Both the position numbers and the translations under genes were made by a program. A model generated the notes under the pieces. That model did no database searches. It was not told the origin of the DNA and saw nothing but the letters and a program-made list of their open reading frames with translations. Below, piece after piece: positions 10,003 to 56,786 of a stretch of 64,000 nt of DNA (the stretch's first letter is position 1; the number at the start of each line of letters is the position of its first letter). The stretch lies in IMG/VR virus record IMGVR_UViG_3300021511_000003, positions 159,016-223,015 of that record. The stretch is one strand, 5' to 3'.

Positions 10003-10008
10003 GGTAAT

Positions 10009-17027: not shown

Positions 17028-18194
17028 TTAATTATGTTCTAAGTTAAATACGGTTTTTAAGTAAGAAACGAACTGCTTATTTTCACACATACCTTTACCA
17101 GGGGAATTTGAAATTTTTGCTACAGGTTGACCATTACATTTGGTCATTTTGATTACCATATTGAGAGCAGGATTGGAAAAATTATTTGTTAGTTTTGTTC
17201 CGATACCAAAAGAAACTCCAATATGCATGTTAAGTGCATTGTAAATTTCTTTTGCTTTTTCAAAATCTAATCCATTGCTAAAAACAATGGTTTTTGTCAA
17301 CGGTTCAATTCCTCTATTTTTATAGAATTTAACCATACGAAAACCAAACTGAATAGGGTCAGGTTCGGAATCCTCACGAACACCATCAAATAGTTTATAC
17401 AATAATGGATCGTCAAAATCATGTAAGAAAGCATCTGTATTAATAACATCGGACAATGCTATTCCTAGATCGCCACGATATACTTTTATCCAATTTTCAA
17501 AAGCCATTTTTTGACTGAGATCTAATCTATATTCAAGTTGTTGATGTGCTTGCAACCATTCATGAGCCATAGTACCGATTGGTTTTACATTGTACTTCAT
17601 AGCCAATAATAAATTACTAGTGCCAATAAAATTATTGGTTGCATAGTTTTTACAATATTTTACAACTTTAGAATGCCATCTATAACTTCTTCTTCTTCTG
17701 GTACCAAAGTCTGCAAACTTCAATCCTTCTGGTAAATAATAAAGATTTTCACTCAGTCTCATCTCGGCATCTTTGTAATTGGATATACTAAGATTACAAA
17801 ATATTTCACTAATAATAGACATTAAAGGAACTTCAAAAAGAATAGTTTGAAACCAAGGTCCTTTGATATCAATATTCAGTTCACCAGTATTTGTATTAAT
17901 TGATGTTTTAACTAAATCTGTATTAAATTTATATTGTTTTAAAAACTCAATATATTCTTCACTAAAAAAACGGAGACTTCTTAAATAATCAAGTTCATCT
18001 CTATGAAAATATAGACTGCGTAAGGCATCAATATTAAGTTCAATATCTTGTATTGACTTTTTAAAATTTACACCTTCATAATTTCTACATTTGAATTTAT
18101 ATTCAACTGGAGTTGCTGCATAACCTAATTTTAATACTGCCTGTTGCATAGTAAATTTATACTGGTCATTATCAAGTAAACTATTCTGAATCAT
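17028..18194 (-). CDS. pncB: nicotinate phosphoribosyltransferase
   Basis: True start MIQNSLLDNDQYKFTMQQ; ADFGTRRR, GTSN, GTMAHE, FGIGTKL, KISNSPGK. Confidence 0.92.
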   Translation of the reverse strand: MIQNSLLDNDQYKFTMQQAVLKLGYAATPVEYKFKCRNYEGVNFKKSIQDIELNIDALRSLYFHRDELDYLRSLRFFSEEYIEFLKQYKFNTDLVKTSINTNTGELNIDIKGPWFQTILFEVPLMSIISEIFCNLSISNYKDAEMRLSENLYYLPEGLKFADFGTRRRRSYRWHSKVVKYCKNYATNNFIGTSNLLLAMKYNVKPIGTMAHEWLQAHQQLEYRLDLSQKMAFENWIKVYRGDLGIALSDVINTDAFLHDFDDPLLYKLFDGVREDSEPDPIQFGFRMVKFYKNRGIEPLTKTIVFSNGLDFEKAKEIYNALNMHIGVSFGIGTKLTNNFSNPALNMVIKMTKCNGQPVAKISNSPGKGMCENKQFVSYLKTVFNLEHN

Positions 18195-18566
18195 TGTTTC
18201 TCCTTTGTTATAGTTAAATAAGAAAATATAGAGAATGGATTCTATTCCGGTTCGCCAATTAGCCACCGGGGAAAATCCAGCTGGAAGCCTCAATCGTTTT
18301 GGGAGGCAACGGGTAAATATGTAGCTATTTTGTTAGTGTCACATAACGTTAGTTCATCTTGATATTCTGGTGGAACACCCCATATTAATTACTTAAAAAA
18401 TATAATAACTCTGCTTCATTAATTAATATATATAGATATAATTTTTAAAAATAAGAACATAAAAATGTAGGGTAGGTACAGACTATTTAAGTTTGTTTCC
18501 TTCCATTTATCTTAAACAATCAATTGGTTAAAAAAAATGTTTTGAGTAACAAAATAATAAAAGGAG

Positions 18567-40094: not shown

Positions 40095-41546
40095 ATGAAA
40101 GAGTTACTGACAGAAGTATATAAAACTACAAAAAAAATTTCAGGAGTTGACCCATCAAAACCTGGCAATATGAAAGCAGTTCTTGTTGATGATGCCGCCT
40201 GGGAATCATATGTGACAGGTCTGGCAGAGTCAATTGAGAATAAAAAAGATCGTACTGCATTTGTACAACTGGCAGAAAATACAAGAATTAATTTACTTGA
40301 AAATTCAATGTTTCAAATCAATCCATATGAAACTTTGACCCTTCCAATTCTTCGTGTATTTTACCCTAAACTAGTGGCTAAAGAACTAGTAACAGTTTCA
40401 CCGATGGATAAACCTGAAACTGTAAAAGCATTTGTTAAAGCACAATTTTCACCATCAAACAGTTCTACACAGTATGATGCACCTGTTACCAATACAGATA
40501 TTTCACGCGGTGTTGCTTTTGGTACTCCTATTGCTGCTTCATTATCTGTTCCAAGTAGTGGTTATGATGTTTTGAATACAGCTGGTTTAAATTCAACTGA
40601 AGCTCATTTAGAGAGAGATTTTGAAATTACTGGTGTTTCTGCTGATGGAACTACTTGGGTTGATGTTTCAATTGTACCTGCTGTTGAAGGACATTTTTCA
40701 GCAAGTGTTAGTATCGGTGGTGCTGCTGATGTTATTTCTGGTAAAGTTGATTACTTAAATGGTTTAGTTGATATTTCTAGTACTACAAGTACTGTTCTGT
40801 TCGCTCGCTATCAAGTAACTACTTCTCTGGAAGAAAACAGAATTAACCCAAGAGTTACTTTAAATGTTGATAAAATCAGATTGTATGCAAGAGATAGACA
40901 AATCAGTGCAAATTGGACCATTAATATGGAACAAGATATGAGAGCTCTGTTTGATATTTCAATGCAAGCTGAAATTGTTAATATTCTTGGCCAACAAGTT
41001 GCATTAGACATTGATAGAGAAATTATCAATGCTCTTATTACTGCTAATACAAGATTGAATGCTGCAGATCACCAAGGTACATTCAATAAAACTCCACCTG
41101 TTACATACACTTGGGGAACTAAGTATTGGCACGAAAACATTATTCCTGAATTGAATGCTCTATCAGGTCAGATCTACACTGATACAAACATTGAAGCTGG
41201 TAACGTAATTGCTGCCAATCCACTTGATGTTGCTATTCTTGAAGATCTACAAACATTTAATTACACTGGTACTTCTTCAGTTGATGGTGACCTTGGTTAT
41301 CGTTCAGCTACAGTTGCTGGTGGAAAATGGAAGATCCTGACAAGTTCAGTTGTAACACAAGGAACAATGTTGATGGTTTATAAACCAGTTGAAGAACTGA
41401 AGGCTATTTATTTTTACAGTCCTTATGTGCCAGCAGTTTTACATCCTTATCCATTGGGTTACACACCAAGCTTGACAATTCTTAGTCGATATGCCACAGC
41501 GCTTGTAAGATCATCGGGCGTAGCTACTTTAAGTATTGGTGCATAA
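40095..41546 (+). CDS. major capsid protein (T4 gp23-like)
   Basis: LPILRVFYPKLVAKELVTVSPM, EQDMRA, EIDREII, FYSPYVP, SRYA. Confidence 0.9.
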   Translation: MKELLTEVYKTTKKISGVDPSKPGNMKAVLVDDAAWESYVTGLAESIENKKDRTAFVQLAENTRINLLENSMFQINPYETLTLPILRVFYPKLVAKELVTVSPMDKPETVKAFVKAQFSPSNSSTQYDAPVTNTDISRGVAFGTPIAASLSVPSSGYDVLNTAGLNSTEAHLERDFEITGVSADGTTWVDVSIVPAVEGHFSASVSIGGAADVISGKVDYLNGLVDISSTTSTVLFARYQVTTSLEENRINPRVTLNVDKIRLYARDRQISANWTINMEQDMRALFDISMQAEIVNILGQQVALDIDREIINALITANTRLNAADHQGTFNKTPPVTYTWGTKYWHENIIPELNALSGQIYTDTNIEAGNVIAANPLDVAILEDLQTFNYTGTSSVDGDLGYRSATVAGGKWKILTSSVVTQGTMLMVYKPVEELKAIYFYSPYVPAVLHPYPLGYTPSLTILSRYATALVRSSGVATLSIGA

Positions 41547-41677: not shown

Positions 41678-42469
41678 ATGAGACGAATAACAAGAAAAGA
41701 AAGAAATAGAATACATCTTGTAAAAGATGTTCCTTATGTAACTTGCCCATATTGTGGAAAACAAATGCAATTTTTACACTGGCAACATTTAAAGTTACAC
41801 AATAAAAATATTAAAGATGTTAGAAAAGAGTTTCCTGATATTCCAACAATGACAAAAAAAGATACAGAAAAAAGAAGTAAAAGAAGAGTAAAATGTGAAA
41901 AACAAATTATTGATACATGTAATCAACTTTATGGAGGAATGGGATATTCTAGTGATAAACTATTAAAAAAATCTGAAACTACAACAAGGAATAAATATGG
42001 CAATAAAAATGTTATGAAAACCGATCATGGAAAAAGTTATTTTAAAGGAGATAAGAACCCTTTGAAAGATCCAGAATCTGCAAAAAAAGTTTCGGAATCA
42101 ATGAAAGGAAGAAAATCACCACTTAAAGGAAAAACATATGTTGAAATACTTGGGGAAAGAAAAGCATTAGAAAGAAAATTAGAACTAAAGAAATCTGGTG
42201 CTTATGGTTGTTCTATAACACCTCGTATTTCAGCTCCTCAACTACAACTCTTTGAACTGGTTAAAAAGAAATACCCTACTGCTGTATTGGAGTATCCAGT
42301 TCTTGATTATTGCCTTGATATAGCTGTTCCTGAATTGAAATTGTGTTTTGAATATGATGGTTCATATTGGCATGATATTGAAAAAGATGCAATTAGAGAT
42401 CATATATTAGAAAGTTATGGATGGACTATTAAACGATTTATTGATAAATTACCAGAATATATTAATTAA
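41678..42469 (+). CDS. Zn-finger + DUF559/Vsr-like PD-(D/E)XK endonuclease
   Basis: CPYCG..HLKLH; LDIAVPELKLCFEYDGSYWH; GWTIKRF. Confidence 0.75.
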   Translation: MRRITRKERNRIHLVKDVPYVTCPYCGKQMQFLHWQHLKLHNKNIKDVRKEFPDIPTMTKKDTEKRSKRRVKCEKQIIDTCNQLYGGMGYSSDKLLKKSETTTRNKYGNKNVMKTDHGKSYFKGDKNPLKDPESAKKVSESMKGRKSPLKGKTYVEILGERKALERKLELKKSGAYGCSITPRISAPQLQLFELVKKKYPTAVLEYPVLDYCLDIAVPELKLCFEYDGSYWHDIEKDAIRDHILESYGWTIKRFIDKLPEYIN

Positions 42470-43674: not shown

Positions 43675-44832
43675 TTATCCCTTTATATTTATTAGTGGTT
43701 TGGCATGATCAATTATATTTATAACTATTCCATTTTGTTTTTTGATTACTTCATAGACATTCTTATAAGCGTCAGGTGCTTCATCTATTGTTGACTGATC
43801 GACCTTAGCAACAATACCTTTCATTTGATTTTTGAAAAGTTTCATGTCAATTGTAGATTTGGCTTTCTTTCTACTCATCGTTCGTCCAGCACCATGTGAA
43901 GCTGAATTTAAGTATTTTTCATTACCTAAACCTTCTGTAACATATACACCAGTTTTCATATTACCAGGAATAATTCCAATTTGCCCTTTTTCAGCAGGTG
44001 TTGCACCTTTTCTGTGTAGAACATGCGTCCCTTTTACCTCTGCATGATTATGATTTTCATTAATCATATGATCATGGACTAAAATACTTATTTCGTGCTC
44101 ATTATAACCAAGCAGTAAAAGAATTTCACTTATCATTAATTTTCTATTATCAATAGCGTACTCAAGGGCAAAATTCATATCTTTGAGATATTGCTGCCCT
44201 GATTCACTATTGAGATGAAAGAAACCTTTTGGCAAATCAATATCAATTTTCTTTGAAAGTTTCATATAATAGCTGGCAATCGAATGACCAATATTTCTTG
44301 AACCAGAATGAACAGTTATAGTTAGGTAACCTTTATTATTTTCACCTATTTCAATGAAATGATTGCCGCCACCTAAAGTACCAAGTTGAACATTTAGTTT
44401 ATTATCAACTTTTTTCTGTAGTTCTTTATCTCTAGATGCGCTTTGAAAATCATAATAAACGTATCCATTTTTTCTAGAATTAAACCCAACAGGTATCGTT
44501 TTATAAATATGTTCAAAAAGTTTTATTTTTTCTGATTCTTGTTTAAAGAACTCTTTTGCTTTAATTTTTGTTGCAATATAACACATACCACAACCAATAT
44601 CATATCCTACATATTCAGGAGATATTACATTATCAAGTAATGCTACACCACCAATCGGTAATGTGTAACCTGTATGACAATCAGGCATTACCGCTAATTT
44701 GATTAAAAAGTCAAGTGCAAGGGCTTCATATATTTGTTGTTGTGCAGTCTGTTCTAATTCATGAATAGGAATTAAACTAAAGAGTTTTTCTAATTTTTTA
44801 ACAGGATTTAAATTTTCTGTGTTTTTAGACAT
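43675..44832 (-). CDS. rtcB: RtcB RNA ligase
   Basis: MPDCH, GYDIGCG, LGGGNHFIE, HSGSR, HNH, HRKGAT, HGAGR. Confidence 0.95.
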   Translation of the reverse strand: MSKNTENLNPVKKLEKLFSLIPIHELEQTAQQQIYEALALDFLIKLAVMPDCHTGYTLPIGGVALLDNVISPEYVGYDIGCGMCYIATKIKAKEFFKQESEKIKLFEHIYKTIPVGFNSRKNGYVYYDFQSASRDKELQKKVDNKLNVQLGTLGGGNHFIEIGENNKGYLTITVHSGSRNIGHSIASYYMKLSKKIDIDLPKGFFHLNSESGQQYLKDMNFALEYAIDNRKLMISEILLLLGYNEHEISILVHDHMINENHNHAEVKGTHVLHRKGATPAEKGQIGIIPGNMKTGVYVTEGLGNEKYLNSASHGAGRTMSRKKAKSTIDMKLFKNQMKGIVAKVDQSTIDEAPDAYKNVYEVIKKQNGIVINIIDHAKPLINIKG

Positions 44833-45769: not shown

Positions 45770-47449
45770 TCACCTCATTTTAATTTCATAAAGTTTGTTA
45801 CTTCTAAAGAATCTAACTTGATTTCCTTCTTTACAAAGTCTCATTGTTGAGTTGATAATAGGATCCTCAATTCGTTTGATATTATTTTTATCAAATTTAT
45901 TGAGAAATATTTCCACTGCATCAGTATCTGTAATTAATACACATACCCCATTATCAAGACATGTAAAATTAATTGGTGTATAATCTACATTCTCTTCTAT
46001 ACGACATTTATATTTATTATGTTTATTATCAAATATAATAATGAATCTGTTATATACACCACCTTTATGACCAGTTATAACACAAATCTTATTTTCATAT
46101 TTAGCATCCATGATTTGAAAGTCATTAAGTTCAGGAATAGATTTGATAATAAAATAACTTTTATCAAATGAGGGTAATGGTATTACCACATATTTTTTTC
46201 CAATAATACTCTGAATTATAACATTACTAAACATTTGACTTGAGTTAGGTTCTATATTCCATACAGTTTTAACAATGGGATGAATTTTTTCACCCATATG
46301 TTTGAATGTTAATTCTATCAGTTTCTCTTTATTTTTTAAAAATAGGACATTGTTGGTTATCATCAGGTCAGTACATTCAAGATCAATTTCTGGATTAATT
46401 CCGCCCATAGATTTAAATTTTACTCTTTTATTTTTAATTTTAACAAGAATAGGATGATTCCTTAAAGGAGTAAAAAGTATCTCAACACCAATAGGGAGTT
46501 CATAATCTGTTTTACCTAAATATAATCTCTCTTTTGTTTTAGTAATACCAAGAGATGCATTATGATAAAGAACATCCCCTAAAAATTCCTGTAACTCTAT
46601 GATTTCAAAATTATCAGTATTTTGAACAAGTTGAACAACAATCTGTGCAACTCCTGCTACACCAGGCATAGCAGGCGGTGGCTTTCGTAAACCATTTTCA
46701 AAAATATTATAGAACCAATCTTTATAAGATGCTGGAATTAAAGAAAAATCTCTGGTTGTTGGAGGTAAGGATACAGAACCATTGAAAACTGATACACAAT
46801 CAATAATTCTTTTTTTAAAATCATTCTTTTTATATCCTCTATGTTTTCCCTTAAATGGATGTATTCCGATAAATAATTGAAAAGCAATAATTCCAAATGA
46901 AAACCAATCTGATAATACTGTAAACTCTTTGGTTGTCCAATCTCTAATTGAAGGCATAATTGCTGTTGGTGGATATGATGGAGTTTTCCATGCATTTACA
47001 TCGATAAAATATGGGGTCACAAAGTCTTTTGAAACCATGTAATTCAGCTCATTATTATCAACTATCAAACATTTTTTATCATGAATAAATTGAGTAGTAT
47101 GTTTAATATTTTCAACCAATTCAATAATTTGATCGTTTTCAATTGCATTGTTATTTCGAAAAGTGTTTGTAAATAATTTGCATAAAGTAACAATATCTTC
47201 TCCTAACCAATTCATTGTAAAACCAATTTCGTGCTTTTTTTCATCGAATACTACATCCTGAGGTCTTACAATACTATCATGATTAAGTCTAGATAGTTCC
47301 CCAATTTTTGCAATAGGGATCATTTTTGTTAAATCATTATATATTTTGAAGGCTATGTTACCTTTTTTGTATATACTACCTTCGCCACCTTTGGTAACAT
47401 AATCATTTTGGACTAAATTCACCTTATGCCCATTTACATAGACAATCAT
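45770..47449 (-). CDS. atypical Ser/Thr kinase (TerY-P-type) with C-terminal extension
   Basis: GGEGSIY, AFKIY, DNNELN, FIDVN, DWFSFGIIAFQLFIGIHPFKG. Confidence 0.8.
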   Translation of the reverse strand: MIVYVNGHKVNLVQNDYVTKGGEGSIYKKGNIAFKIYNDLTKMIPIAKIGELSRLNHDSIVRPQDVVFDEKKHEIGFTMNWLGEDIVTLCKLFTNTFRNNNAIENDQIIELVENIKHTTQFIHDKKCLIVDNNELNYMVSKDFVTPYFIDVNAWKTPSYPPTAIMPSIRDWTTKEFTVLSDWFSFGIIAFQLFIGIHPFKGKHRGYKKNDFKKRIIDCVSVFNGSVSLPPTTRDFSLIPASYKDWFYNIFENGLRKPPPAMPGVAGVAQIVVQLVQNTDNFEIIELQEFLGDVLYHNASLGITKTKERLYLGKTDYELPIGVEILFTPLRNHPILVKIKNKRVKFKSMGGINPEIDLECTDLMITNNVLFLKNKEKLIELTFKHMGEKIHPIVKTVWNIEPNSSQMFSNVIIQSIIGKKYVVIPLPSFDKSYFIIKSIPELNDFQIMDAKYENKICVITGHKGGVYNRFIIIFDNKHNKYKCRIEENVDYTPINFTCLDNGVCVLITDTDAVEIFLNKFDKNNIKRIEDPIINSTMRLCKEGNQVRFFRSNKLYEIKMR

Positions 47450-47459
47450 AGGATTCTCC

Positions 47460-47774
47460 TTATATATTAATTCCAGGAATTAAATTAAATACTTGTGGAT
47501 CAAAAACATCAAAGATATAACATTTTCTAAACGTGAGAGTATCTTCAATTGCATATGAATTAATTCCTAATTGATAATAAATTTTTCCGGTTATATTATC
47601 ACCATTAATCTCTTTTACTTCTACCCAGAAGTATTCACATTCATTTCTTATTTTAACATAATGTCCAACCTTAATATTATTGAAATAAACTGGGTTGATA
47701 GCTCGAGTGTTAGTCGGGCATAATTCTTTCATTATTTTTGGTTCTGTAAGATCAGTTGGATTATAGTGTGCCAT
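47460..47774 (-). CDS. hypothetical protein (DUF2314-like)
   Basis: YVKIRNECEYFWVEV. Confidence 0.5.
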   Translation of the reverse strand: MAHYNPTDLTEPKIMKELCPTNTRAINPVYFNNIKVGHYVKIRNECEYFWVEVKEINGDNITGKIYYQLGINSYAIEDTLTFRKCYIFDVFDPQVFNLIPGINI

Positions 47775-48580
47775 TAATCTATCCTCATATATGCTCCTAC
47801 TGAAAGATCATCGTAGTGAACGATATCATCTTTGGTAAATTGATTCAGAGCTTTTTTTAATCTTCGTTTAAGAAATTCCCCTTTGATGGTTTTAAATGCC
47901 ATTATACTGGATAAAACTTCAAAAATAGATATCATATCTTTTTCAGTTGGGGTCTTCTTTATAAAAGATTGAATACCATCTGAGCAAATTAAAAGAGACT
48001 GGTATTCTGACATTTGATAACGTCTAGTAATTTGTGCATCATATGCATATTCTTTTGAGATTGAAACTGTTTCACTCATTTGTGTTTTAAATATTTTTGA
48101 ATTTTTATTTATGTGATATATCTTATCTCGATCTTCATCAATGTAATATGTTAAATAATAAGGAGCATTTTTATCAAATTCAACAGAATTAAATTCTATA
48201 ATACCAGAATTATTTTTGCATATAATAGCACCATCTCCATACATAAATACATTGATAATCCCATCTAATTCAAATGAAATAATTAGGGTTGCATCAAGGC
48301 AGCTAATGGGCAAACCCAATTGTCTAGCTGTCAATTCAGCATTATGAATTATCCAACTTCCCATTTTATAATAATCAAGATTATGAAGATTACTCTGTCG
48401 ATATTTTAAATATTGTTTAGCCAGATGACAAAGTATTCCTGCACCCATTTCAGTATTATTAGATGAAGAACATCCATCAGATAAAATTAAGAAAGGAGTA
48501 GGGGTATTACCTTGAATTATATAGTCTTGACAAATTTTATGACTATCTCCTATCTTCAAAAATGTATCAGTATTTATCAT
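47774..48580 (-). CDS. PP2C-like protein phosphatase
   Basis: CQDY, SDGCSS, GDG, CSDG, DDLS. Confidence 0.85.
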   Translation of the reverse strand: MINTDTFLKIGDSHKICQDYIIQGNTPTPFLILSDGCSSSNNTEMGAGILCHLAKQYLKYRQSNLHNLDYYKMGSWIIHNAELTARQLGLPISCLDATLIISFELDGIINVFMYGDGAIICKNNSGIIEFNSVEFDKNAPYYLTYYIDEDRDKIYHINKNSKIFKTQMSETVSISKEYAYDAQITRRYQMSEYQSLLICSDGIQSFIKKTPTEKDMISIFEVLSSIMAFKTIKGEFLKRRLKKALNQFTKDDIVHYDDLSVGAYMRID

Positions 48581-48740
48581 TGTTAGTTCCTTTATAATTG
48601 TTTATTACCTTTTTACTCGTCCATATCTAGCATTTTTCGTAAGGTTTGTGAATTGTGTGCATGACCAGCTTCGCGTACATAAAATTGATATGGGAGGAGC
48701 GCTGTAGATGGTGTTATCTCGACTCCTCCTCCCATTAAAA

Positions 48741-49850
48741 TTAGGCAGCCACTCGGGCTGATTTTATATATGTTCGTTTTAGAATTGAAACTGAATGTTC
48801 ACCAACTGCTGGTTGAAATAATTTCAGTCGTTGCCATTTGATTCGTTTTCCTGGCATGACAAAATCCTCTTCCCATTTTACATTTTTGAACCAGGATGGC
48901 ATTCTTTCAGGATTTATATAGTGGGCGTATTCTGATGCTCTGGTCATAAAGCGCAGTTTGGAGTTAACTTTCATTAGTTCTTTTCTGTCTGTATATGCAG
49001 CTACAAGCCCTTTTTGTGTTTCGGGATATATATGATATGTACCGGATCTAAATGTGTCTGGTGTATAAACCATAGATTCAAATGCAACAAATTTCTTTTG
49101 AATTGAATCCCCATATGTATAGTTATGGGTTTCTGGTTTTTCACTTGTTGTTGGAAAGTCTATACCGGCAGCCTTAATACGTTTTATTTCCTTGTTCAAA
49201 AAGGCAGCCTGGTCTGTCAATCGGTCTTCCAACATTTTGGTAATAATATAATGATGACCGAAAAATGATGTCCATCGATTCGGGTGAATGAAATTTTTAA
49301 ATATGATTTTATTTCCAGACCATAGTTTGTTTTCTGTAATGAAACGATTTTCTCTTATGGTAGGATCGAATTGAATTGTTTCCCATCCTGAGTAAAATTT
49401 ACCATCCTTTCCGGTAATTGAAAATGTGCGAACATCACCAACTTTGTCTTCACCAATAATATTCTGATCTATTATATTGACATTGAAAGAAAAGAAAAAT
49501 TTATTGGCTCCAACACTGATAAGCTCCCCGTTACGATTAAATCTAGATTTTAATACCTGATCTTCACGTATTTTCGTTTGAGTGTGGGGTTTGTAAGTTG
49601 GAATGTTAATTATAGCACCACGACCGGCAAGCGAATATAGAAAACATGCTAAATCCAAATCTGTACCTTTAAATATTCCATAATCATCATATGCAGGACT
49701 GGGTTTCCTGGTAAAAAGGTCATAGTTCCACCATTCAATGACTTGATCACAAATTGGTTGAATTTCAGCGTTTCGGTTAAGGATTGATACAACAAGTGGA
49801 TTCGACAAAATAGTTTTAATACTTTGGGCAACATGCTTTGGTGCTGTCAT
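48741..49850 (-). CDS. hypothetical protein (369 aa)
   Basis: Long ORF, no motif recognised. Confidence 0.7.
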   Translation of the reverse strand: MTAPKHVAQSIKTILSNPLVVSILNRNAEIQPICDQVIEWWNYDLFTRKPSPAYDDYGIFKGTDLDLACFLYSLAGRGAIINIPTYKPHTQTKIREDQVLKSRFNRNGELISVGANKFFFSFNVNIIDQNIIGEDKVGDVRTFSITGKDGKFYSGWETIQFDPTIRENRFITENKLWSGNKIIFKNFIHPNRWTSFFGHHYIITKMLEDRLTDQAAFLNKEIKRIKAAGIDFPTTSEKPETHNYTYGDSIQKKFVAFESMVYTPDTFRSGTYHIYPETQKGLVAAYTDRKELMKVNSKLRFMTRASEYAHYINPERMPSWFKNVKWEEDFVMPGKRIKWQRLKLFQPAVGEHSVSILKRTYIKSARVAA

Positions 49851-49865
49851 ATATTTGTTCCTTTT

Positions 49866-50411
49866 TTATGGTTGCATATTAGCAACACGGTTAAGTTCAC
49901 GAACAACATTAGTTGCTTCTTCTGCACAAAATTCATCTGGTACTATCAATGATTTATATAAAACTTCTTTTTCATGAAAATAAAATTCCTGGGTAATAAT
50001 TAAACAATCTGGTAAACTTCCTCCTAACTCATAAATAATAGTTGCAGCTCTTTTATGGACTGTATTGTATGCTACTATATTTCCTTGAGAATAGATTGTA
50101 TTCTTACGATTAATCCACTTTATATCCTTTTTAAATGTTCCATCTTTAGGACGAAGTGTTGTAATCAATATATATTTATCTGTATTATTGTGTTTCCATA
50201 CATGATATTCTCGAATTGCTATAGACTTCTCTATATTAACACTTTTACTACCCAGGTATTTATATGTTGGAAATATTGCGATTTCATTATGATATAGTGG
50301 GCGAAAATAATTAATATCTTCAATAACATCAGTTTCTATTTTTTCTACTCCAACACAACCTATTGTTATTAATAAAGATATTAACAGAATAAATTTTAAA
50401 ATATTTTTCAT
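49866..50411 (-). CDS. putative lipoprotein
   Basis: Signal peptide ending LITIGC. Confidence 0.6.
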   Translation of the reverse strand: MKNILKFILLISLLITIGCVGVEKIETDVIEDINYFRPLYHNEIAIFPTYKYLGSKSVNIEKSIAIREYHVWKHNNTDKYILITTLRPKDGTFKKDIKWINRKNTIYSQGNIVAYNTVHKRAATIIYELGGSLPDCLIITQEFYFHEKEVLYKSLIVPDEFCAEEATNVVRELNRVANMQP

Positions 50412-50422
50412 ATATGATCCTT

Positions 50423-50475
50423 TCTGAAAACTTTTGACATAAAAACACCTATATTTTTATGTCAAAAGTTTCAGA
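50423..50475. terminator. ~22-bp inverted repeat after vWA gene
   Basis: TCTGAAAACTTTTGACATAAAAA / TTTTTATGTCAAAAGTTTCAGA. Confidence 0.65.
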
Positions 50476-50480
50476 TAAAA

Positions 50481-51239
50481 TTAGAAGGTCAAGGTTTGGC
50501 TTGGTGCGCCAGTTCCAAGAGCTTGACTTTGGCTACTGATACTTTCACTTACAAAGTTGGCCAGCTTTGCCAGTTTGCCAGCTGTTGCATCTCCGATATC
50601 AATAAACTGCGTTAACCCGGCATCCTTGCAAAACCTTTCCAGTGAATCTATAACCTGTTGTTGTTTATTAACTTGTGGATCTTTCAAAGCAACCACAATG
50701 ATAACATTTGATTCGATTTCTTCATTCAACATGGCATCCGTATTTTTATCTTTGATTGATTTGGGTGTCATGGTAGATCGGTTATCCATTCCATCGGTAA
50801 TGATATAAATTGCACCATTACAATCAAAATCCTGATCAATCAACCGCTTAGAATATTCCAAGGTGGCACATACTGCATCATACGTAGCATCAAAGAGACT
50901 GGTCATACCATCGGGATACAAAGGAGAATAAGAATTTATGTCGATATCTCCAAGATTAATGAAACCATGAACTTCAATGATATTTTCGTTAAACAGTAAA
51001 ATACGAAGCAGTAGATTTTCTGACCGGGGGCTTTTCTGACATGCTTCAATTATGGATTTGATAGCATCCAGTAGATCATCGGCGAATCTGATTACGCTAC
51101 CGGAAATATCGCACACAATGGTCACCAGTGTATATTCGGTTGCACCCAATTCTTCAATTCTTATAGCAGAGAACTTGAATGAACCAGGTCCTTTAATATC
51201 AATTACTTGTGTATCATCTTTCCCCATCATTTTTGGCAT
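50481..51239 (-). CDS. vWA domain protein (TerY-like)
   Basis: MIDAS DISGS, DGMTSLFDA, IITDGMDNRS. Confidence 0.85.
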   Translation of the reverse strand: MPKMMGKDDTQVIDIKGPGSFKFSAIRIEELGATEYTLVTIVCDISGSVIRFADDLLDAIKSIIEACQKSPRSENLLLRILLFNENIIEVHGFINLGDIDINSYSPLYPDGMTSLFDATYDAVCATLEYSKRLIDQDFDCNGAIYIITDGMDNRSTMTPKSIKDKNTDAMLNEEIESNVIIVVALKDPQVNKQQQVIDSLERFCKDAGLTQFIDIGDATAGKLAKLANFVSESISSQSQALGTGAPSQTLTF

Positions 51240-51254
51240 TGTATATTACTCCTT

Positions 51255-51533
51255 TTAAAATGTTATATTATTGTCAATGATGTATCTCCCAATACGGCAC
51301 TCATAATCTGGACTGCTTTCAATTTGTGTGTGACTGTAACATGGGGTTTCTTTATACCACCATTTTGAATGAATACTACATGAATATTCTCCAGGTTTTG
51401 AACCTCTTAAATGTTTACAAGGACCATTCCCTTCATGTATGTCTATATTGTTTTCACTTATGGGTTTTTCTGGATCATCAACAATTACAACTATATATTT
51501 ATGACAGCAATACCCACAACGAAGACATATCAT
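51255..51533 (-). CDS. CxxCxxCC (YkgJ-like) Cys-cluster protein
   Basis: CLRCGYCC...CKHL...CSIH. Confidence 0.7.
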   Translation of the reverse strand: MICLRCGYCCHKYIVVIVDDPEKPISENNIDIHEGNGPCKHLRGSKPGEYSCSIHSKWWYKETPCYSHTQIESSPDYECRIGRYIIDNNITF

Positions 51534-52354
51534 AATAAATATTCTTTAGTTGTACTGACTTGCATTCCTCTTGCTTGCATATCCGCAACAAACTTATTAC
51601 CAATGTCCGAAAATAGTGTGGTGCCGGGAGGATCAGCTACATCAGATGTGGCATCTGTAAGGAGTACCATCTTTTTGATACTTTCCTTGCCAAATTCATC
51701 GGCAATGTCGATAACTGTATTTGCCAAACAATGTGATCTGGCTTCACCGGCAAGTAGGATAACATCTGCTTTTTCAAGGGTGTCAATCAACTTCATATTG
51801 ATATTTGTATCAGGATCTGATGTGTCAACCACGTCAGCCTTAACGGCAGAGTAATGTTCAGTTCGATAATTGGACCCCTTAGTTACATAATCAATGATAC
51901 CAAATTGTTCCTCCCATTCAAGAAATGCATCAAATAGAGGAGCATCAGGCTTTTCATTTATAACAGAACCACCCCAGCTACCGATAAGACAATGTGGAGG
52001 CCAAATACAAAGCGGATAACGTTGGTTATCTTCTAGAGCCTGAACATAATCCTGAACACGCTTCTGAAACTGTGGGTTTGTAGAACGATATAATCCTTGT
52101 TTTACATCTGATACACTGATGACTGTAAATGGGTCGGGATGTTTGCCGGCGGAATTGATCCAGAAAATCGGGTGGGCGATGTCAACAAAATGATGACTGT
52201 CGAGGGTAACATGAATATCATCAATCTTTTTTTTAAGTCGTATTATCATTGCTGCTAATCGTGCCATATCTTCGGTTGCTCCGGGAACATACAAAGAACC
52301 ATTTGGATGACAAAAATCATTCTGTGGGTCAACAACTAATAATTCAATTTGCAT
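51530..52354 (-). CDS. nicotinamidase/isochorismatase-family cysteine hydrolase (PncA-like)
   Basis: VVDPQNDF, LDSH, WPPHC, VTKG, GEARSHC catalytic triad D/K/C. Confidence 0.85.
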   Translation of the reverse strand: MQIELLVVDPQNDFCHPNGSLYVPGATEDMARLAAMIIRLKKKIDDIHVTLDSHHFVDIAHPIFWINSAGKHPDPFTVISVSDVKQGLYRSTNPQFQKRVQDYVQALEDNQRYPLCIWPPHCLIGSWGGSVINEKPDAPLFDAFLEWEEQFGIIDYVTKGSNYRTEHYSAVKADVVDTSDPDTNINMKLIDTLEKADVILLAGEARSHCLANTVIDIADEFGKESIKKMVLLTDATSDVADPPGTTLFSDIGNKFVADMQARGMQVSTTKEYLL

Positions 52355-53461: not shown

Positions 53462-55267
53462 CTACTCCTTTTTATTATTACGTGATAGACCTAAACTCAA
53501 ATTACTGGCACCAAGAATGGCTGCTGCACCCTCAAGACCACCTGCCTGACCCATAACAAATGTAGTCGGGAATTTGATCATATTGGGATGTGACGATGCT
53601 GCCGCAAGAACTTCTTTTACATATGCAAGTTCAAATGCCTTATCTTGGCCAAGCACGAGAGCCTGAGCTTTCTGTCCAGAGGCAACTGCTTTCAAATAAT
53701 TTTCTTCACCTATACCCTCTTTCTTACGGGCGGCTGCATTATTATCTGCAATAGTAATACCGATTTGGGATTTCATCAAACGACCTTGTTCATCGGCACG
53801 TGCTCGCTCTTTTTCAGTTTCAACACGTTCGCTCTGTGCGATCTTTTCCTGTTTATACGTAGCCATTAAAGATTCGGCAAGTTGTTTTCTTTTACCAGGA
53901 ATCAGAAGTGACGGCGGAACAGCAGGATCTCCAAAACGTACCCATTGAACAGTAAGACCAGCTTGGGCGCCGGCAGGTATTAACTTACGTGCAACTTCTT
54001 TTTCCAGTTCTTCTCTATGATAAAGAAGGTCAAGAACTTCACGGGGGCGAGTAATTTTCTGCATCTTGGGTTCACCCTTTGAATCGGGAATTTCATTACC
54101 ATCTTTGTCAATTGCAAGATTATACACTGGCTCACCTTCTTTATCAAGGACAGGTTCTTCAACAGTGACAACCTGTGATACAACATTCCGCAGGATTGAA
54201 CGATAATTGGGAGTAATGATTTTGTTTTCAACAGCTTCTAGACTCCCAACAGATGCAACAACAAACGGTGCATTCTCAGGTGTAACCTGAACTTGGACTC
54301 TGGAATCCTGAAATACATCCCATCCTTGAACACGAAGAACAATTGCCATATCGGCGGCATTTTCTGGAGTTATAATTTTTTCTTCATGAGGAGATTGAAC
54401 AATCTTTCCATCATCCCCAATTGTCAAATCAATCCATTTTCGAGTATACCCACCAATATATTTCCAGGTTTGAACTCTGGTATCAACGATTGTAACATCA
54501 TAGGCTTTCTCATTGAGATAATATTCACCTGCATTATATACATCATTCCAAACACCACGATAACCTTTAGGTACTATGGGAACAGACAGGTCAGTTTGTG
54601 TAATACCAGTTGGTAGAATTGGTGGTCCTTTATAATCTTCACCAACATTCGATTTAATAACAGCAACATGACCAGCTGGAACAGGAGTTGATGATCCCTC
54701 ATATGCTTCAAATAGATAACGATTTATTCTGTATTCACCAGGAGGTAATATGGTCAACTGCGGACCTTTGATACCTTTGGGGACACCATCTTTATTATCA
54801 TATCCCATAAATATCATTGCGTTAATCATACTACTTAAATCATCCCATTCCGAAGCAATGAATTGACCTTTTGGCATGGGATTTCCATCTTTGGCAACAA
54901 GTAGACCATATTTGCCTTGTTCAACTCTAAGTATTGGTAATTCTTCAATATCATGTGTAACCCGTATGAAAGGAATTAAATGAAAACCAGGAGCTAGAAT
55001 TTTTGCCTGGGGTCCTTTTTCATTTATATTAGCAATAATTCGCCCAGACGGCATCTGATTTCCGAAATAAATACGTTTGAGATGACCAACACTGTTCGAA
55101 TCAATAATAAGGCAACTGGTTGCCAAAAACGCTGTAAATGCAATACCAATTGCTGAACCACGAATCGTCAAACGAATCCACTTATTATTACTATCCCTAT
55201 CTGGAAACAAGTGAGGCACAGTAAAAGCTACAATAATACATATAACGATTAGAAACAAAAGTACCAT
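53462..55267 (-). CDS. SPFH/band-7 (flotillin-like) membrane protein
   Basis: Two N-terminal TMs, GPQAKILAPGFH, repeated PG/GEY modules, coiled-coil C-terminus. Confidence 0.8.
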   Translation of the reverse strand: MVLLFLIVICIIVAFTVPHLFPDRDSNNKWIRLTIRGSAIGIAFTAFLATSCLIIDSNSVGHLKRIYFGNQMPSGRIIANINEKGPQAKILAPGFHLIPFIRVTHDIEELPILRVEQGKYGLLVAKDGNPMPKGQFIASEWDDLSSMINAMIFMGYDNKDGVPKGIKGPQLTILPPGEYRINRYLFEAYEGSSTPVPAGHVAVIKSNVGEDYKGPPILPTGITQTDLSVPIVPKGYRGVWNDVYNAGEYYLNEKAYDVTIVDTRVQTWKYIGGYTRKWIDLTIGDDGKIVQSPHEEKIITPENAADMAIVLRVQGWDVFQDSRVQVQVTPENAPFVVASVGSLEAVENKIITPNYRSILRNVVSQVVTVEEPVLDKEGEPVYNLAIDKDGNEIPDSKGEPKMQKITRPREVLDLLYHREELEKEVARKLIPAGAQAGLTVQWVRFGDPAVPPSLLIPGKRKQLAESLMATYKQEKIAQSERVETEKERARADEQGRLMKSQIGITIADNNAAARKKEGIGEENYLKAVASGQKAQALVLGQDKAFELAYVKEVLAAASSHPNMIKFPTTFVMGQAGGLEGAAAILGASNLSLGLSRNNKKE

Positions 55268-55356: not shown

Positions 55357-56109
55357 TTATTTGCATTTCATATCATTATAACCGCATCCTTCTATTCTAT
55401 GAACTTCTTTATGACAATCTTTACATAAAGTAATTACTTTATCAAGATCAGCACTTTCAAGAGGTTCCCATCTAATTCCTTCTATATGATGACAATGTAA
55501 CCCAACCTCCAACTTATCTTGATGTTTATTACATCTTTGACAAGTATAATTATCAAGTTCAAATCTCATTTGACGAAGTTCAGGTTGAACTTCTCTGGAT
55601 GTAGCTGGTTTATACTCTTTAGGATAATATTGTTGATTATATATTGAGCATTCTGTTTTACATTTCTCCGAGCAGTAAAATCTATGTTCTCCAAAGCCAA
55701 TGGAATTTATAGATCTTATTCTGTCAATAACGGTATGCAACTTTGGTATAAACCATTTACCACAATAAACACATCTAACCTCTAGTATATTTTGATCGTT
55801 TATACATCTTCGACATTTTTCAATAAACGATAATTGTGGGTTGTATGTATCATATTTTGGGATATTAATTTTATTATACCCTCCTTTCCAGTTATTATTA
55901 CCAGAACTCATCTGTGTTTTTTTCATTTTATTACTCATTATTTCTTTAGTTTTCAAAGAACGTTTTTTTCCAAGGTTTTTACCTTTTGTATTTTTACTGT
56001 TTATTTTTTTCATAGCTGGGCAAGAGTTATGACTTTTACTACAACACCATTTACCATTTTTTAACTGATAAATTGCTTTTTGATTGCAACCGTAATTACA
56101 TAATGGCAT
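55357..56109 (-). CDS. HNH endonuclease, paralog of 38949..39821
   Basis: Near-identical C-terminal HNH domain. Confidence 0.82.
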   Translation of the reverse strand: MPLCNYGCNQKAIYQLKNGKWCCSKSHNSCPAMKKINSKNTKGKNLGKKRSLKTKEIMSNKMKKTQMSSGNNNWKGGYNKINIPKYDTYNPQLSFIEKCRRCINDQNILEVRCVYCGKWFIPKLHTVIDRIRSINSIGFGEHRFYCSEKCKTECSIYNQQYYPKEYKPATSREVQPELRQMRFELDNYTCQRCNKHQDKLEVGLHCHHIEGIRWEPLESADLDKVITLCKDCHKEVHRIEGCGYNDMKCK

Positions 56110-56120: not shown

Positions 56121-56786
56121 TTATCTTTTATCTGGTAACCACATCCACCATCTATCTCCGAAACCTGGTGCACTGAGAGCATACCACTTTGTAGTATCCA
56201 GTAATGTCCCTTTATTATAAGTGTGCCAATGACCGAAAAACCATAAATCAGGTTTGTACATATCCCATAATGAAGATAGAGCTTGATTTGATGGTTCGTG
56301 TGTTTTTTCTGGATAAAATTTAATCAATTGTGGTACTAACTCACTTGGGCACGTATGAGTTATAAATATATCGATCTTGACATCTGGGAGATCTACTAAA
56401 TCTGCTTGTGTAATAATTTCTTCGGGAAACCAAGTAATACCAATAGTTCTCATATGTTGATCAATTGACCAAGCACCCCCCATAAACATTATGGTTCGAC
56501 CATCAGGTAATGTATAAATTGAACCTCTTGGCATATAAATAATTCCGGGTTCCAGTTCATCACTTTCTCTATTCTTTAACGACCAATGATCTTCATGATT
56601 TCCATCACACCATAATAATTTTTCTGCCCCTTGAAGTTTTATAGATGAAAGCGGAACACTCCAGCTTACCTTTGGCCAATATCCAAAGTCACCACAACAT
56701 ATAATAAGTTCTGGTTTCCTTCGGTTTATAAGTTCATTTAATTGACTAAAATTATTATGAACATCACCTGTTATTAGAACTTTCAT
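56121..56786 (-). CDS. calcineurin-like metallophosphoesterase
   Basis: GDVH, CGDFG, DGNHE, THTCP, FGHWH. Confidence 0.88.
   Translation of the reverse strand: MKVLITGDVHNNFSQLNELINRRKPELIICCGDFGYWPKVSWSVPLSSIKLQGAEKLLWCDGNHEDHWSLKNRESDELEPGIIYMPRGSIYTLPDGRTIMFMGGAWSIDQHMRTIGITWFPEEIITQADLVDLPDVKIDIFITHTCPSELVPQLIKFYPEKTHEPSNQALSSLWDMYKPDLWFFGHWHTYNKGTLLDTTKWYALSAPGFGDRWWMWLPDKR

What the first reader, a model, noticed from the sequence alone, without database searches (positions are those of the whole stretch)
45770..52354. Phage-borne vWA / PP2C / kinase set (TerY-P-like) dispersed among extra genes and linked to a nicotinamidase
Seen, in transcription order: PncA-like, CxxCxxCC, vWA, lipoprotein, 369-aa unknown, PP2C, DUF2314-like, kinase; RtcB follows. 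The vWA and PncA-like genes look GC-richer than the phage backbone. Known: the TerY(vWA)-PP2C-kinase triad is a bacterial stress/anti-phage module. Inference: a captured phospho-switch used for superinfection exclusion, inter-phage competition or counter-defence; the 369-aa protein and lipoprotein are candidate new components.
Basis: partly seen in the sequence, partly recalled or inferred. Interest (0 to 1): 0.62.

Follow-up and report, generated by a model that had tools for sequence, protein, structure and literature searches.

The report
Nicotinamidase-linked vWA/PP2C/kinase operon in jumbo phage
A T4-like jumbo phage from marine sediment carries a conserved four-gene set, a nicotinamidase followed by a vWA protein, a PP2C phosphatase and a YegI-type protein kinase, which it shares with sediment bacteria; this ties a poorly understood "TerY-P" phospho-switch to NAD+ salvage.

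Summary
The genes are real and lie in the stated order on the minus strand. The core is four genes: a PncA-type nicotinamidase, a MIDAS-bearing vWA protein, a PP2C_2 phosphatase, and a Ser/Thr kinase fused to a 7-bladed beta-propeller. All catalytic residues are invariant.

These four keep the same order and strand in about 35 loci of uncultivated jumbo or huge phages. They also occur in chromosomal contigs of Desulfobacterales and sulfur-oxidising Gammaproteobacteria. Some loci hold the four genes with nothing between them.

The kinase is specifically YegI-like, and the order vWA-PP2C-kinase copies E. coli yegL-pphC-yegI. The set is therefore TerY-P-like. It differs in the kinase C-terminus, matches no PADLOC model, and adds an obligatory nicotinamidase.

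The phage also encodes PncB. PncA and PncB co-vary in related phages. Some bacterial copies sit next to the NAD regulator NrtR.

The CxxCxxCC gene, the lipoprotein and the 104-aa gene are lineage-specific inserts, and "DUF2314-like" is not supported. The 369-aa protein is a widely conserved orphan-fold phage protein. It is not part of the core, but in seven loci it is fused to a vWA domain.

Best reading: a phospho-regulated nicotinamide-to-NAD+ salvage module exchanged between phages and hosts. A role in defence or counter-defence is untested.

The parts
51530..52354 (-). PncA-type nicotinamidase (274 aa), the first gene of the conserved four-gene core
   Evidence: Invariant in 18 homologues: D9/K159/C209 triad, D52-x-H54 (+H61) metal site, W118-P-x-H121-C122 motif. 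Yeast Pnc1 (2h0r) E 2e-6. NCBIfam nicotinamidase E 1e-4. Pfam Isochorismatase is below its cut-off. Always directly upstream of the vWA gene.
51255..51533 (-). CxxCxxCC (YkgJ-like) small Cys-rich protein (92 aa); lineage-specific insert
   Evidence: The motif is in the sequence. PF03692 E 0.005, below cut-off. Its start overlaps the PncA stop by 4 bp. No homologue in about 80 related loci. Present in independent contigs of the same phage.
50481..51239 (-). vWA protein (252 aa) with MIDAS motif, a conserved N-terminal extension and an invariant Ser-rich C-terminal tail; second core gene
   Evidence: D44-x-S46-x-S48, T113 and D149-G150 are invariant, also in E. coli YegL. ESM Atlas model pTM 0.90 matches VWA clusters at TM 0.70-0.89. 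JGI names relatives 'YegL'. Tail S231/S233/S235/S238...F252 invariant. hhalign to YegL is weak (E 0.033).
49866..50411 (-). Putative lipoprotein or secreted protein (181 aa); lineage-specific insert
   Evidence: N-terminal hydrophobic segment (KD 2.58), then Cys19. No family hit. Homologue only in L005 (41% identity).
48741..49850 (-). 369-aa conserved orphan-fold phage protein; not part of the four-gene core, but recurrently linked or fused to vWA domains
   Evidence: 343 homologues, 55-78% identity among the best 120, lengths mostly 367-375 aa. AF2 pLDDT 85 with no convincing PDB or Atlas fold match. BFVD match to a Bacillus phage SP-15 protein. Only 5 of 41 loci have the module nearby. Fused to a vWA domain in 7 loci. 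Terminator-like hairpin at its 3' end.
47774..48580 (-). PP2C-type Ser/Thr phosphatase (268 aa), PP2C_2 family as E. coli PphC; third core gene
   Evidence: PF13672 E 1.6e-14. PphC is in the same family, E 6e-52. D35-G36, G115-D116-G117, D201-G202 and D257-D258 are invariant across 17 homologues and PphC.
47460..47774 (-). 104-aa protein; accessory insert, not DUF2314
   Evidence: No Pfam hit at E<=1. BLAST against YegJ E 0.25. Homologue only in L005.
45770..47449 (-). YegI-type Hanks Ser/Thr kinase (residues 1-260) fused to a 7-bladed beta-propeller (residues about 275-559); fourth core gene
   Evidence: G21-G22-E23, K35, D131, N136, D150, D181-W182 and R255 invariant, E51 nearly invariant. 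hhalign to YegI probability 98%, E 2e-13 over 289 columns. The only hit of the profile in the E. coli K-12 chromosome is yegI. AF2 of residues 262-559 gives pLDDT 88; VIA Z 13-15 over 250-275 residues and Foldseek hits to Nup133/DDB1 propellers. No transmembrane segment.
17028..18293 (-). PncB nicotinate phosphoribosyltransferase (421 aa); the enzyme that uses the nicotinamidase's product, encoded 33 kb away in the same phage
   Evidence: NF003704 476 bits (cut-off 379) and TIGR01514 389 bits (cut-off 270). PF04095 E 1e-67. PncA and PncB co-vary in related contigs. PncB lies directly downstream of the kinase in L062.
43675..44832 (-). RtcB RNA ligase (385 aa); downstream backbone neighbour, not part of the module
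   Evidence: PF01139 E 1.7e-84. Found next to the 369-aa gene also in loci that lack the module.

Best explanation
The region holds a four-gene operon, expanded here by unrelated inserts.

Shown:
- The four genes are a PncA-type nicotinamidase, a MIDAS vWA protein, a PP2C_2 phosphatase, and a YegI-type Ser/Thr kinase with a C-terminal 7-bladed beta-propeller.
- All four look catalytically competent.
- Their order and strand are conserved in many jumbo and huge phages and in sediment bacteria.
- The phage also encodes PncB.

Inferred:
- The nicotinamidase converts nicotinamide to nicotinate. Nicotinamide is the product of NAD+-consuming enzymes, including NADase-type immunity.
- Phage PncB converts nicotinate to NaMN, and host NadD and NadE complete NAD+ synthesis.
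- The vWA/PP2C/kinase triad is a TerY-P-type phospho-switch attached to this enzyme.
- The propeller senses a protein or ligand cue.
- The kinase and PP2C set the phosphorylation state of the vWA protein, most likely on its invariant Ser-rich C-tail.
- The vWA protein, through its MIDAS site, binds or releases a partner, most likely PncA or something it acts with. This would gate nicotinamide recycling during infection.

The module has been exchanged repeatedly between phages and their hosts.
For: Gene calls and domains.

Catalytic residues are invariant in PncA, the kinase, PP2C and the vWA MIDAS site.

TerY-P likeness:
- The kinase is related to YegI.
- The PP2C is in PphC's family.
- The gene order equals yegL-pphC-yegI.

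Co-occurrence in viral loci:
- PncA is upstream of vWA in 19 of 19 evaluable loci.
- PP2C is present in 18 of 19.
- The kinase is present in 16 of 17.
- L051, L054, L055, L056 and L063 are compact operons with nothing between the four genes.

Three huge GenBank phages (LR756511, LR745208, LR756500) hold PncA, vWA and the kinase together.

The same operon lies in chromosomal contexts in Desulfobacterales (L066, L071, L080). The PncA-vWA pair alone occurs in five further bacterial contigs.

Link to NAD:
- PncB is in this genome.
- PncA and PncB are both present in G006, G007 and G008 and both absent from G009 and G010. PncB is also present in G002.
- PncB is immediately downstream of the kinase in L062.
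- NrtR (NUDIX + NrtR_WHD) follows PncA-vWA-PP2C in two Competibacteraceae contigs.
- A NADAR gene lies in the same leftward gene block.

The PncA+vWA tree interleaves phage and cellular copies.
Against: - There is no biochemical or expression evidence. No RNA run holds the locus.
- A physical PncA-vWA contact is not shown. The complex prediction gave no verdict.
- The similarity of the vWA protein to TerY/YegL is weak by sequence (hhalign E 0.033, probability 1.5%; no HMMER hit in E. coli).
- No PADLOC model matched the vWA protein or the PP2C, and the kinase gave only weak hits to models of other systems.
- PncB was found in only 2 of the 6 module-bearing large contigs tested (the window's own genome and G002). 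Those records are 36-94% complete, so the host may supply PncB.
- Two related phages have PncA and PncB without the vWA gene, so salvage does not need the triad.
- Five bacterial loci have PncA-vWA without PP2C or kinase, so the phospho-switch is dispensable for the pair.
- The substrate of the kinase is unknown.
Confidence: 0.45

Rival explanations
1. The triad works as TerY-P does in bacteria, as an anti-phage module. The jumbo phage carries it for superinfection exclusion or inter-phage competition. The nicotinamidase would be its effector or helper, for example by removing the nicotinamide that a competitor's NAD+-rebuilding pathway needs.
For: The triad is homologous to yegL-pphC-yegI. 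TerY-P-like modules are reported as stand-alone defence systems (Gao et al. 2020, as cited in PMC10542128). The module is mobile between phages and hosts.
Against: The vWA protein and the PP2C hit no PADLOC model, and the kinase gave only weak hits to models of other systems. The kinase C-terminus is a propeller, not the OB fold or zinc ribbon of described TerY-P kinases. The flanks of the bacterial copies scanned were housekeeping genes, not recognisable defence genes. The same phage encodes PncB, which uses the nicotinamidase's product constructively.
Confidence: 0.2
2. These are two unrelated functions that travel together. PncA is simply an NAD+ salvage gene working with PncB. The vWA/PP2C/kinase triad is a separate host-takeover or signalling device, in the manner of phage-encoded kinases that phosphorylate host proteins. 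On this view the adjacency reflects co-mobility, not a shared mechanism.
For: PncA occurs without the vWA gene in G006 and G007. The PncA-vWA complex prediction gave no support. PncA and vWA differ from PP2C and the kinase in GC content and in degree of conservation.
Against: The order PncA then vWA is kept across genomes of 27-64% GC, in phages and in two bacterial phyla. This includes loci where PP2C and the kinase are lost but the pair stays. The two genes are often separated by only a few bases. In L062 the NAD enzymes PncA and PncB bracket the triad. NrtR adjoins PncA-vWA-PP2C.
Confidence: 0.2
3. The vWA protein is a MIDAS-type metallochaperone or assembly factor. It loads or stabilises the metal site of the nicotinamidase, or of the 369-aa protein in phages where that protein is fused to a vWA domain. 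The kinase and PP2C are only accessory regulators.
For: PncA has an invariant metal site. vWA proteins are known cochaperones (stated in PMC7824862 and PMC9503650). The PncA-vWA pair persists without PP2C and kinase. The 369-aa protein is fused to a vWA domain in 7 loci.
Against: No MoxR-type AAA+ partner was seen beside the genes. Canonical nicotinamidases need no chaperone. The fused vWA domains belong to a different subgroup from the module's vWA protein.
Confidence: 0.15

Closest known systems
TerY-P triad (Anantharaman, Iyer & Aravind 2012, as summarised in PMC10542128); reference example E. coli K-12 yegL-pphC-(yegJ)-yegI
   Same: A vWA protein with a MIDAS site, a PP2C_2 phosphatase and a YegI-family Ser/Thr kinase, in the same transcription order. 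YegI and PphC are an experimentally shown kinase/phosphatase pair (bioRxiv 10.1101/819920 and 10.1101/303594).
   Different: [quoted passage not shown] The vWA protein is very divergent from YegL. A nicotinamidase gene is an obligatory first gene. There is no DUF2314 partner.
TerY-P anti-phage defence system (Gao et al. 2020; in PADLOC)
   Same: Three-component vWA/PP2C/kinase logic. It is mobile and found in conflict-prone genomes.
   Different: That kinase carries a C-terminal OB fold. Here the vWA protein and the PP2C hit no PADLOC model, and the kinase gave only weak hits to models of other systems. The module sits in a phage and in housekeeping neighbourhoods of bacteria. Defence activity is untested.
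PncA/PncB Preiss-Handler NAD+ salvage, and phage NAD+ salvage or reconstitution genes in jumbo phages (PMC11662467; PncA-like gp275 of phage G, PMC12484599)
   Same: A nicotinamidase with the full catalytic and metal-binding signature, plus a nicotinate phosphoribosyltransferase in the same phage. Jumbo phages are known to carry NAD+ synthesis genes.
   Different: This nicotinamidase subfamily is about 265-305 aa long and is coupled to a vWA/PP2C/kinase switch. No paper in the searchable library mentions such a coupling. No cultured phage has it.
NrtR regulon of NAD metabolism (Nudix-related transcriptional regulator)
   Same: In two Competibacteraceae contigs an NrtR-type gene (NUDIX + NrtR winged helix) directly follows PncA-vWA-PP2C. 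This is the kind of neighbourhood NrtR keeps with NAD salvage genes (established knowledge).
   Different: The phage has no NrtR in the region. NrtR binding sites were not searched for.

Membership tests
TerY-P triad | vWA-fold protein with an intact MIDAS site (DxSxS...T...D) | tested here: met
   D44/S46/S48, T113 and D149 are invariant. The vWA fold is seen in the ESM Atlas.
TerY-P triad | The vWA protein belongs specifically to the TerY/YegL family | tested here: inconclusive
   hhalign to YegL gives E 0.033 and probability 1.5%, but the MIDAS site and the Ser-rich C-tail align. There is no HMMER hit in E. coli. JGI's COG-based name for relatives is 'YegL'.
TerY-P triad | PP2C-type phosphatase of the PphC/YegK kind | tested here: met
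   PF13672 E 1.6e-14. PphC is in the same family. The metal-binding Asp residues are invariant in an alignment that includes PphC.
TerY-P triad | Ser/Thr kinase of the YegI kind with catalytic residues intact | tested here: met
   hhalign probability 98%, E 2e-13. yegI is the only hit in the K-12 chromosome. K35, D131, N136 and D150 are invariant.
TerY-P triad | Kinase C-terminus is a zinc ribbon (classical) or an OB fold (Gao 2020 defence version) | tested here: not met
   The C-terminal 300 residues fold as a 7-bladed beta-propeller. Definition taken from PMC10542128.
TerY-P triad | The three genes are co-directional and conserved together | tested here: met
   Order vWA-PP2C-kinase on one strand in 16 viral loci and several MAG loci.
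TerY-P defence system (PADLOC) | Proteins match the defence-system HMMs | tested here: not met
   No PADLOC hit for the vWA protein or the PP2C at E<=0.1. The kinase hits only MADS6, MkoA and PD-T4-6 models weakly.
TerY-P defence system (PADLOC) | Confers resistance to phage | not testable with these tools
   Needs expression and plaque assays.
Nicotinamidase (PncA) | Asp-Lys-Cys catalytic triad | tested here: met
   D9, K159 and C209 are invariant in 18 sequences.
Nicotinamidase (PncA) | Metal site (Asp, His, His) and WPxHC motif | tested here: met
   D52, H54 and W118-P119-x-H121-C122 are invariant; H61 is nearly invariant. The motif assignment rests on my knowledge of Pnc1/PncA structures.
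Nicotinamidase (PncA) | Passes curated family thresholds | tested here: not met
   Pfam Isochorismatase 20.3 bits against a cut-off of 27. NCBIfam PRK11609 21.7 bits against 174. Yeast Pnc1 structure E 2e-6. It is a divergent subfamily.
Nicotinamidase (PncA) | Hydrolyses nicotinamide | not testable with these tools
   Needs an enzyme assay. Supporting context: PncB co-occurs.
DUF2314 (YegJ-like), for the 104-aa protein | Matches PF10077 or YegJ | tested here: not met
   No Pfam hit at E<=1. BLAST against YegJ E 0.25.
CxxCxxCC / YkgJ (PF03692), for the 92-aa protein | CxxCxxCC motif and family score | tested here: inconclusive
   The motif is present at residues 3-10. The score is 18 bits against a cut-off of 23.

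The most novel reading that the evidence does not exclude
TerY-P-type vWA/PP2C/kinase triads may be switches that read or control the nicotinamide/NAD+ state of the cell. In this subfamily the switch would directly gate a nicotinamidase. Jumbo phages would have taken the whole unit from their hosts, or given it to them, to keep NAD+ up against NAD+-depleting immunity. This would give the first mechanistic handle on what TerY-P systems sense and do. The 369-aa orphan-fold protein, which other phages fuse to a vWA domain, would then be a second client of such vWA switches.
Probability: 0.25. Interest if true: 0.75.

Novelty: new variant of a known kind. Interest (0 to 1): 0.62.

Why it matters
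The way TerY-P works is unknown, both as a stress module and as an anti-phage system. Here a large natural family couples the triad invariably to one enzyme whose chemistry is known, a nicotinamidase. The family has about 900 kinase clusters and 1600 vWA clusters in metagenomes. In places the enzyme is accompanied by PncB or NrtR.

This gives a concrete, testable hypothesis: phospho-control of nicotinamide recycling. It links two active fields, NAD+-centred phage-host conflict and bacterial Ser/Thr signalling. It also documents repeated exchange of a four-gene operon between jumbo phages and sediment bacteria (Desulfobacterales, Beggiatoa-like Gammaproteobacteria), which hints at the hosts of these uncultivated phages.

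Tried and rejected
- **Cultured or GenBank phages.** A near-identity search against GenBank phages found nothing. Protein-level searches found only three uncultured huge phages, one faecal fragment and a weak hit in Rhodococcus phage Trina. The 369-aa protein has no match there.
- **Family scans.** PHROGs, PADLOC and NCBIfam gave no informative names for the vWA protein, the lipoprotein, the 369-aa, 104-aa or 94-aa proteins.
- **PDB sequence searches.** A single-sequence search and a profile search for the vWA protein both found nothing.
- **Fold of the 369-aa protein.** Foldseek against the PDB, VIA-align wide and the ESM Atlas (by shape and by features) found no convincing match; only helical-hairpin matches at Z<6 appeared. 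I first suspected a capsid protein. That is rejected, because a gp23-type major capsid protein is at 40095-41546.
- **PncA-vWA complex.** The prediction returned no verdict, so it counts neither for nor against binding.
- **Promoters and terminators.** The scan did not exceed the shuffled expectation for promoters.
- **Expression.** No RNA run holds the locus.
- **Other candidate NAD genes.** The CTP_transf_like hit is a heptose-1-phosphate adenylyltransferase (RfaE domain II), not an NMN adenylyltransferase. The weak NAD_synthase hit is QueC-like.
- **'Recently acquired foreign DNA' as the reason for high GC in PncA and vWA.** I do not favour this. The genes are conserved across the whole phage clade. 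The other GC-rich genes here (the 369-aa and 601-aa proteins) are also among the best conserved, so selection or expression-linked composition is as likely.

No alternative genetic code was used.

Full report
**Setting**

The window is the last 64 kb of a 223-kb viral contig: GC 30%, CheckV completeness 71%. It is a T4-like jumbo myovirus. It has:
- a gp23-type major capsid protein at 40095-41546;
- a gp20-type portal at 33999-35933;
- a family-B DNA polymerase fused to a UDG domain at 21638-24862;
- a DnaB-like helicase.

Near-identical DNA occurs in marine-sediment and hydrothermal-vent metagenomes from at least six studies. Their independent contigs bridge the junctions of the region, so the gene order is not an assembly artefact.

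**Observation**

On the minus strand, tightly packed and each with a Shine-Dalgarno-like motif, the genes run in this order:
- PncA-like, 274 aa, 52354-51530;
- a CxxCxxCC protein, 92 aa;
- vWA, 252 aa;
- a putative lipoprotein, 181 aa;
- a 369-aa unknown;
- PP2C, 268 aa;
- a 104-aa protein;
- a 559-aa kinase;
- three small ORFs, then RtcB.

Upstream in the same direction are NADAR, a calcineurin-like phosphoesterase, an HNH endonuclease, a 601-aa membrane-anchored protein, a 161-aa protein and RNase H.

PncA (GC 0.399) and vWA (0.389) are at the 97th percentile of gene GC in this genome. PP2C and the kinase are average.

'DUF2314-like' has no support for the 104-aa protein.

**What the four main proteins are**

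*PncA-like.* Curated family scores are below threshold. However, the yeast nicotinamidase Pnc1 is hit at E 2e-6. In 18 homologues the D9/K159/C209 triad, the D52-x-H54 metal site and the WPxHC motif are invariant.

*vWA.* The window protein has no Pfam hit of its own. The MIDAS residues D44/S46/S48, T113 and D149 are invariant. The ESM Atlas model (pTM 0.90) matches VWA clusters at TM 0.70-0.89. The protein also has a conserved N-terminal extension of about 35 residues and an invariant Ser-rich C-terminal tail (S231, S233, S235, S238 ... F252). That tail aligns with the Ser-rich C-terminus of E. coli YegL.

*PP2C.* PF13672, E 1.6e-14. The four Asp-containing motifs are shared with E. coli PphC.

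*Kinase.* The Hanks residues are invariant (GGE 21-23, K35, D131, N136, D150, D181-W182, R255; E51 nearly so). Residues 262-559 fold with pLDDT 88 into an all-beta domain of about 28 strands. It matches 7-bladed propellers (VIA Z 13-15 over 250-275 residues; Foldseek hits to Nup133 and DDB1).

**Is it TerY-P-like?**

I fetched E. coli K-12 yegL (vWA) - pphC (PP2C_2) - yegJ (DUF2314, opposite strand) - yegI (kinase) as the reference triad. YegI and PphC are experimentally characterised.

- The phage kinase profile aligns to YegI with hhalign probability 98%, E 2e-13, over the whole kinase domain.
- Searched against the entire K-12 chromosome, the profile finds only yegI (E 8e-12).
- YegI itself is too divergent for Pfam Pkinase, so this looks like a specific family relationship.
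- The PP2C family and the gene order also agree.

Differences:
- The vWA protein is only weakly alignable to YegL.
- The vWA protein and the PP2C hit no PADLOC model, and the kinase gave only weak hits to models of other systems.
- The kinase C-terminus is a propeller. Described TerY-P kinases end in a zinc ribbon or an OB fold (PMC10542128), and YegI is membrane-embedded.

I therefore call it TerY-P-like, a new variant, and not a member of the defence family as currently modelled.

**Which genes belong together**

*Anchoring on the vWA protein.* This search found 20 viral loci. In these:
- PncA lies directly upstream in 19 of 19 evaluable loci;
- PP2C lies downstream in 18 of 19;
- the kinase lies downstream in 16 of 17;
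- all are on one strand;
- L051, L054, L055, L056 and L063 have the four genes with nothing between them;
- other loci carry different small inserts.

The CxxCxxCC gene occurs in no other locus. The lipoprotein and the 104-aa gene recur only in L005.

*Anchoring on the 369-aa protein.* This search found 41 loci, and only 5 have the module within 10 kb. That protein is therefore a widely conserved backbone gene, not a core component. It has 343 homologues, at 55-78% identity among the best 120, mostly 367-375 aa long.

Iterated searches then showed something further. In seven loci (L024, L025, L031, L034, L035, L036, L045) the 369-aa protein is fused to a C-terminal vWA domain of a sister subgroup. 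L004 carries a free paralogue of that subgroup. So there is a recurrent link between the 369-aa protein and vWA domains that deserves follow-up.

The fold of the 369-aa protein (pLDDT 85) has no convincing match in the PDB or the Atlas. The only convincing match found is an uncharacterised protein of Bacillus phage SP-15.

**Beyond phages**

A scan of one genome per species returned only MAG contigs.

- Two of them (Thermoplasmatales and Promethearchaeota bins) look like mis-binned phage. They also carry the 369-aa gene and RNase H.
- Others are clearly cellular.
  - L066, L071 and L080 (Desulfobacterales) carry the compact PncA-vWA-PP2C-kinase operon. Their kinases are 563-581 aa. The flanks hold alanine racemase, MoaA, a hybrid histidine kinase, a ketoacyl synthase, an ABC transporter, LptF/G and transketolase.
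  - Five contigs keep only the PncA-vWA pair, next to housekeeping genes. They come from Desulfonema, a deltaproteobacterium, a gammaproteobacterium, Thiotrichaceae and Beggiatoa.
  - Two Competibacteraceae contigs have PncA-vWA-PP2C followed by an NrtR-type regulator (NUDIX + NrtR winged helix).

A maximum-likelihood tree of PncA+vWA interleaves phage and cellular copies. The labels need 3-5 changes, and at least 2 are forced by well-supported branches. This indicates repeated exchange. The tree is unrooted, so the direction is open.

The families are large but known only from metagenomes: 1600 vWA clusters and 932 kinase clusters. No cultured phage or isolate genome was found.

**Link to NAD+**

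- The same phage encodes a bona fide nicotinate phosphoribosyltransferase, PncB, at window 17028-18293. NF003704 scores 476 bits against a cut-off of 379.
- In five related large contigs, PncA and PncB are either both present and 4-10 kb apart (G006, G007, G008) or both absent (G009, G010).
- G002, which carries PncA-vWA, also has PncB.
- In L062, PncB lies immediately downstream of the kinase, so the two NAD enzymes bracket the triad.

Together with the NrtR neighbourhood, this makes nicotinamide to nicotinate to NaMN salvage the best-supported biochemical role of the first gene.

G006 and G007 have PncA and PncB without the vWA gene. The triad is therefore an add-on to a PncA subfamily and not a requirement for salvage.

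**Mechanism (inferred)**

The tightest and best-conserved pair is PncA-vWA, often only a few bases apart. PP2C and the kinase are more divergent and sometimes missing.

I propose that the vWA protein is the output element. Through its MIDAS site it would bind PncA or a partner of PncA. Its state would be set by phosphorylation of the invariant Ser-rich tail by the propeller-kinase and reversed by the PP2C. The propeller would be the input domain.

In the phage this would gate the recycling of nicotinamide, the product of NAD+-consuming enzymes including NADase immunity, into NAD+ via PncB and the host's NadD and NadE.

None of these contacts is shown. The one complex prediction I ran gave no verdict, and no RNA data exist.

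Rival readings are given with their tests in the Rival explanations section:
- mere co-mobility of two unrelated functions;
- a vWA metallochaperone.

**Literature**

- The jumbo-phage survey of Iyer et al. (PMC7824862) does not mention PP2C or TerY.
- Their NAD+/ADPr survey (PMC9503650) does not mention nicotinamidase.
- Papers that mention phage PncA treat it as a stand-alone gene (PMC12484599, PMC11662467).
- No paper in the library combines nicotinamidase with vWA, or PncA with von Willebrand and PP2C.

**Verdict**

This is a new variant of the TerY-P kind: a nicotinamidase-coupled triad with a propeller-kinase, shared by jumbo phages and sediment bacteria. The annotation-level claims are solid. 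The functional model is a moderately supported hypothesis, with confidence about 0.45.

Noticed in passing
window 48741-49850 (-); L024, L025, L031, L034, L035, L036, L045 around 10000-11780: The 369-aa protein is one of the best-conserved genes of this phage clade: 343 homologues, lengths mostly 367-375 aa. Its confident AF2 model matches no convincing solved or Atlas fold; the only convincing hit is an uncharacterised Bacillus phage SP-15 protein. In seven loci it is fused to a C-terminal vWA domain.
   Followed up: partly
window 17028-18293 (-): A full-length PncB nicotinate phosphoribosyltransferase scoring above NCBIfam equivalog cut-offs. With PncA it forms a phage-encoded entry into Preiss-Handler NAD+ salvage.
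   Followed up: yes
window 56121-57238 (-): A NADAR-domain gene (151 aa) overlaps by 4 bp a calcineurin-like phosphoesterase (221 aa). Both are in the same leftward block as RNase H, the module and RtcB. The same pair is conserved in L005. This looks like an ADP-ribose/RNA-repair cluster.
   Followed up: no
window 53462-55267 (-): A 601-aa protein with an N-terminal transmembrane segment and a faint SPFH/Band-7 match. It is as GC-rich (0.399) as PncA and vWA, and it is conserved at 60-70% identity in L005 and L046.
   Followed up: no
window 38949-39821 (-), 41678-42469 (+), 55357-56109 (-), 57666-58325 (+), 58597-59451 (+): Several homing-endonuclease-like genes (NUMOD3, HNH, DUF559/Vsr-like) are scattered around the capsid gene and the module. 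This may help explain the variable small inserts between core genes.
   Followed up: no
window 21638-24862 (+): The family-B DNA polymerase carries an N-terminal uracil-DNA-glycosylase-superfamily domain (1074 aa fusion).
   Followed up: no
L003 10037-10561 (IMG/VR contig of 390 kb): A stand-alone 174-aa ORF is 30% identical to residues 352-538 of the kinase's beta-propeller. So part of the propeller also occurs as a free gene in another huge phage.
   Followed up: no
L078 9603-10754 and L079 6037-6774 (Competibacteraceae MAG contigs): NrtR-type regulators (NUDIX + NrtR winged helix) directly follow PncA-vWA-PP2C. These loci lack the kinase.
   Followed up: partly
L032 11286-13993 (IMG/VR contig of 416 kb): Downstream of the 369-aa gene lie a 342-aa unknown and a 570-aa protein with a canonical Pfam Pkinase domain (E 7e-24). 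This is a different kinase in the same position.
   Followed up: no
G008:C1:182691-183443 (contig of L021): The vWA homologue next to PncA in this contig has one in-frame TAG. It could be a pseudogene, a sequencing error or recoding; this was not examined.
   Followed up: no
window 62208-63998 (+); genome G000:C1:141347-141679 and 154317-154694: A collagen-repeat protein lies at the window's end. Elsewhere in the genome are a QueC-like gene (a possible deazaguanine DNA modification pathway) and a heptose-1-phosphate adenylyltransferase-like gene.
   Followed up: no
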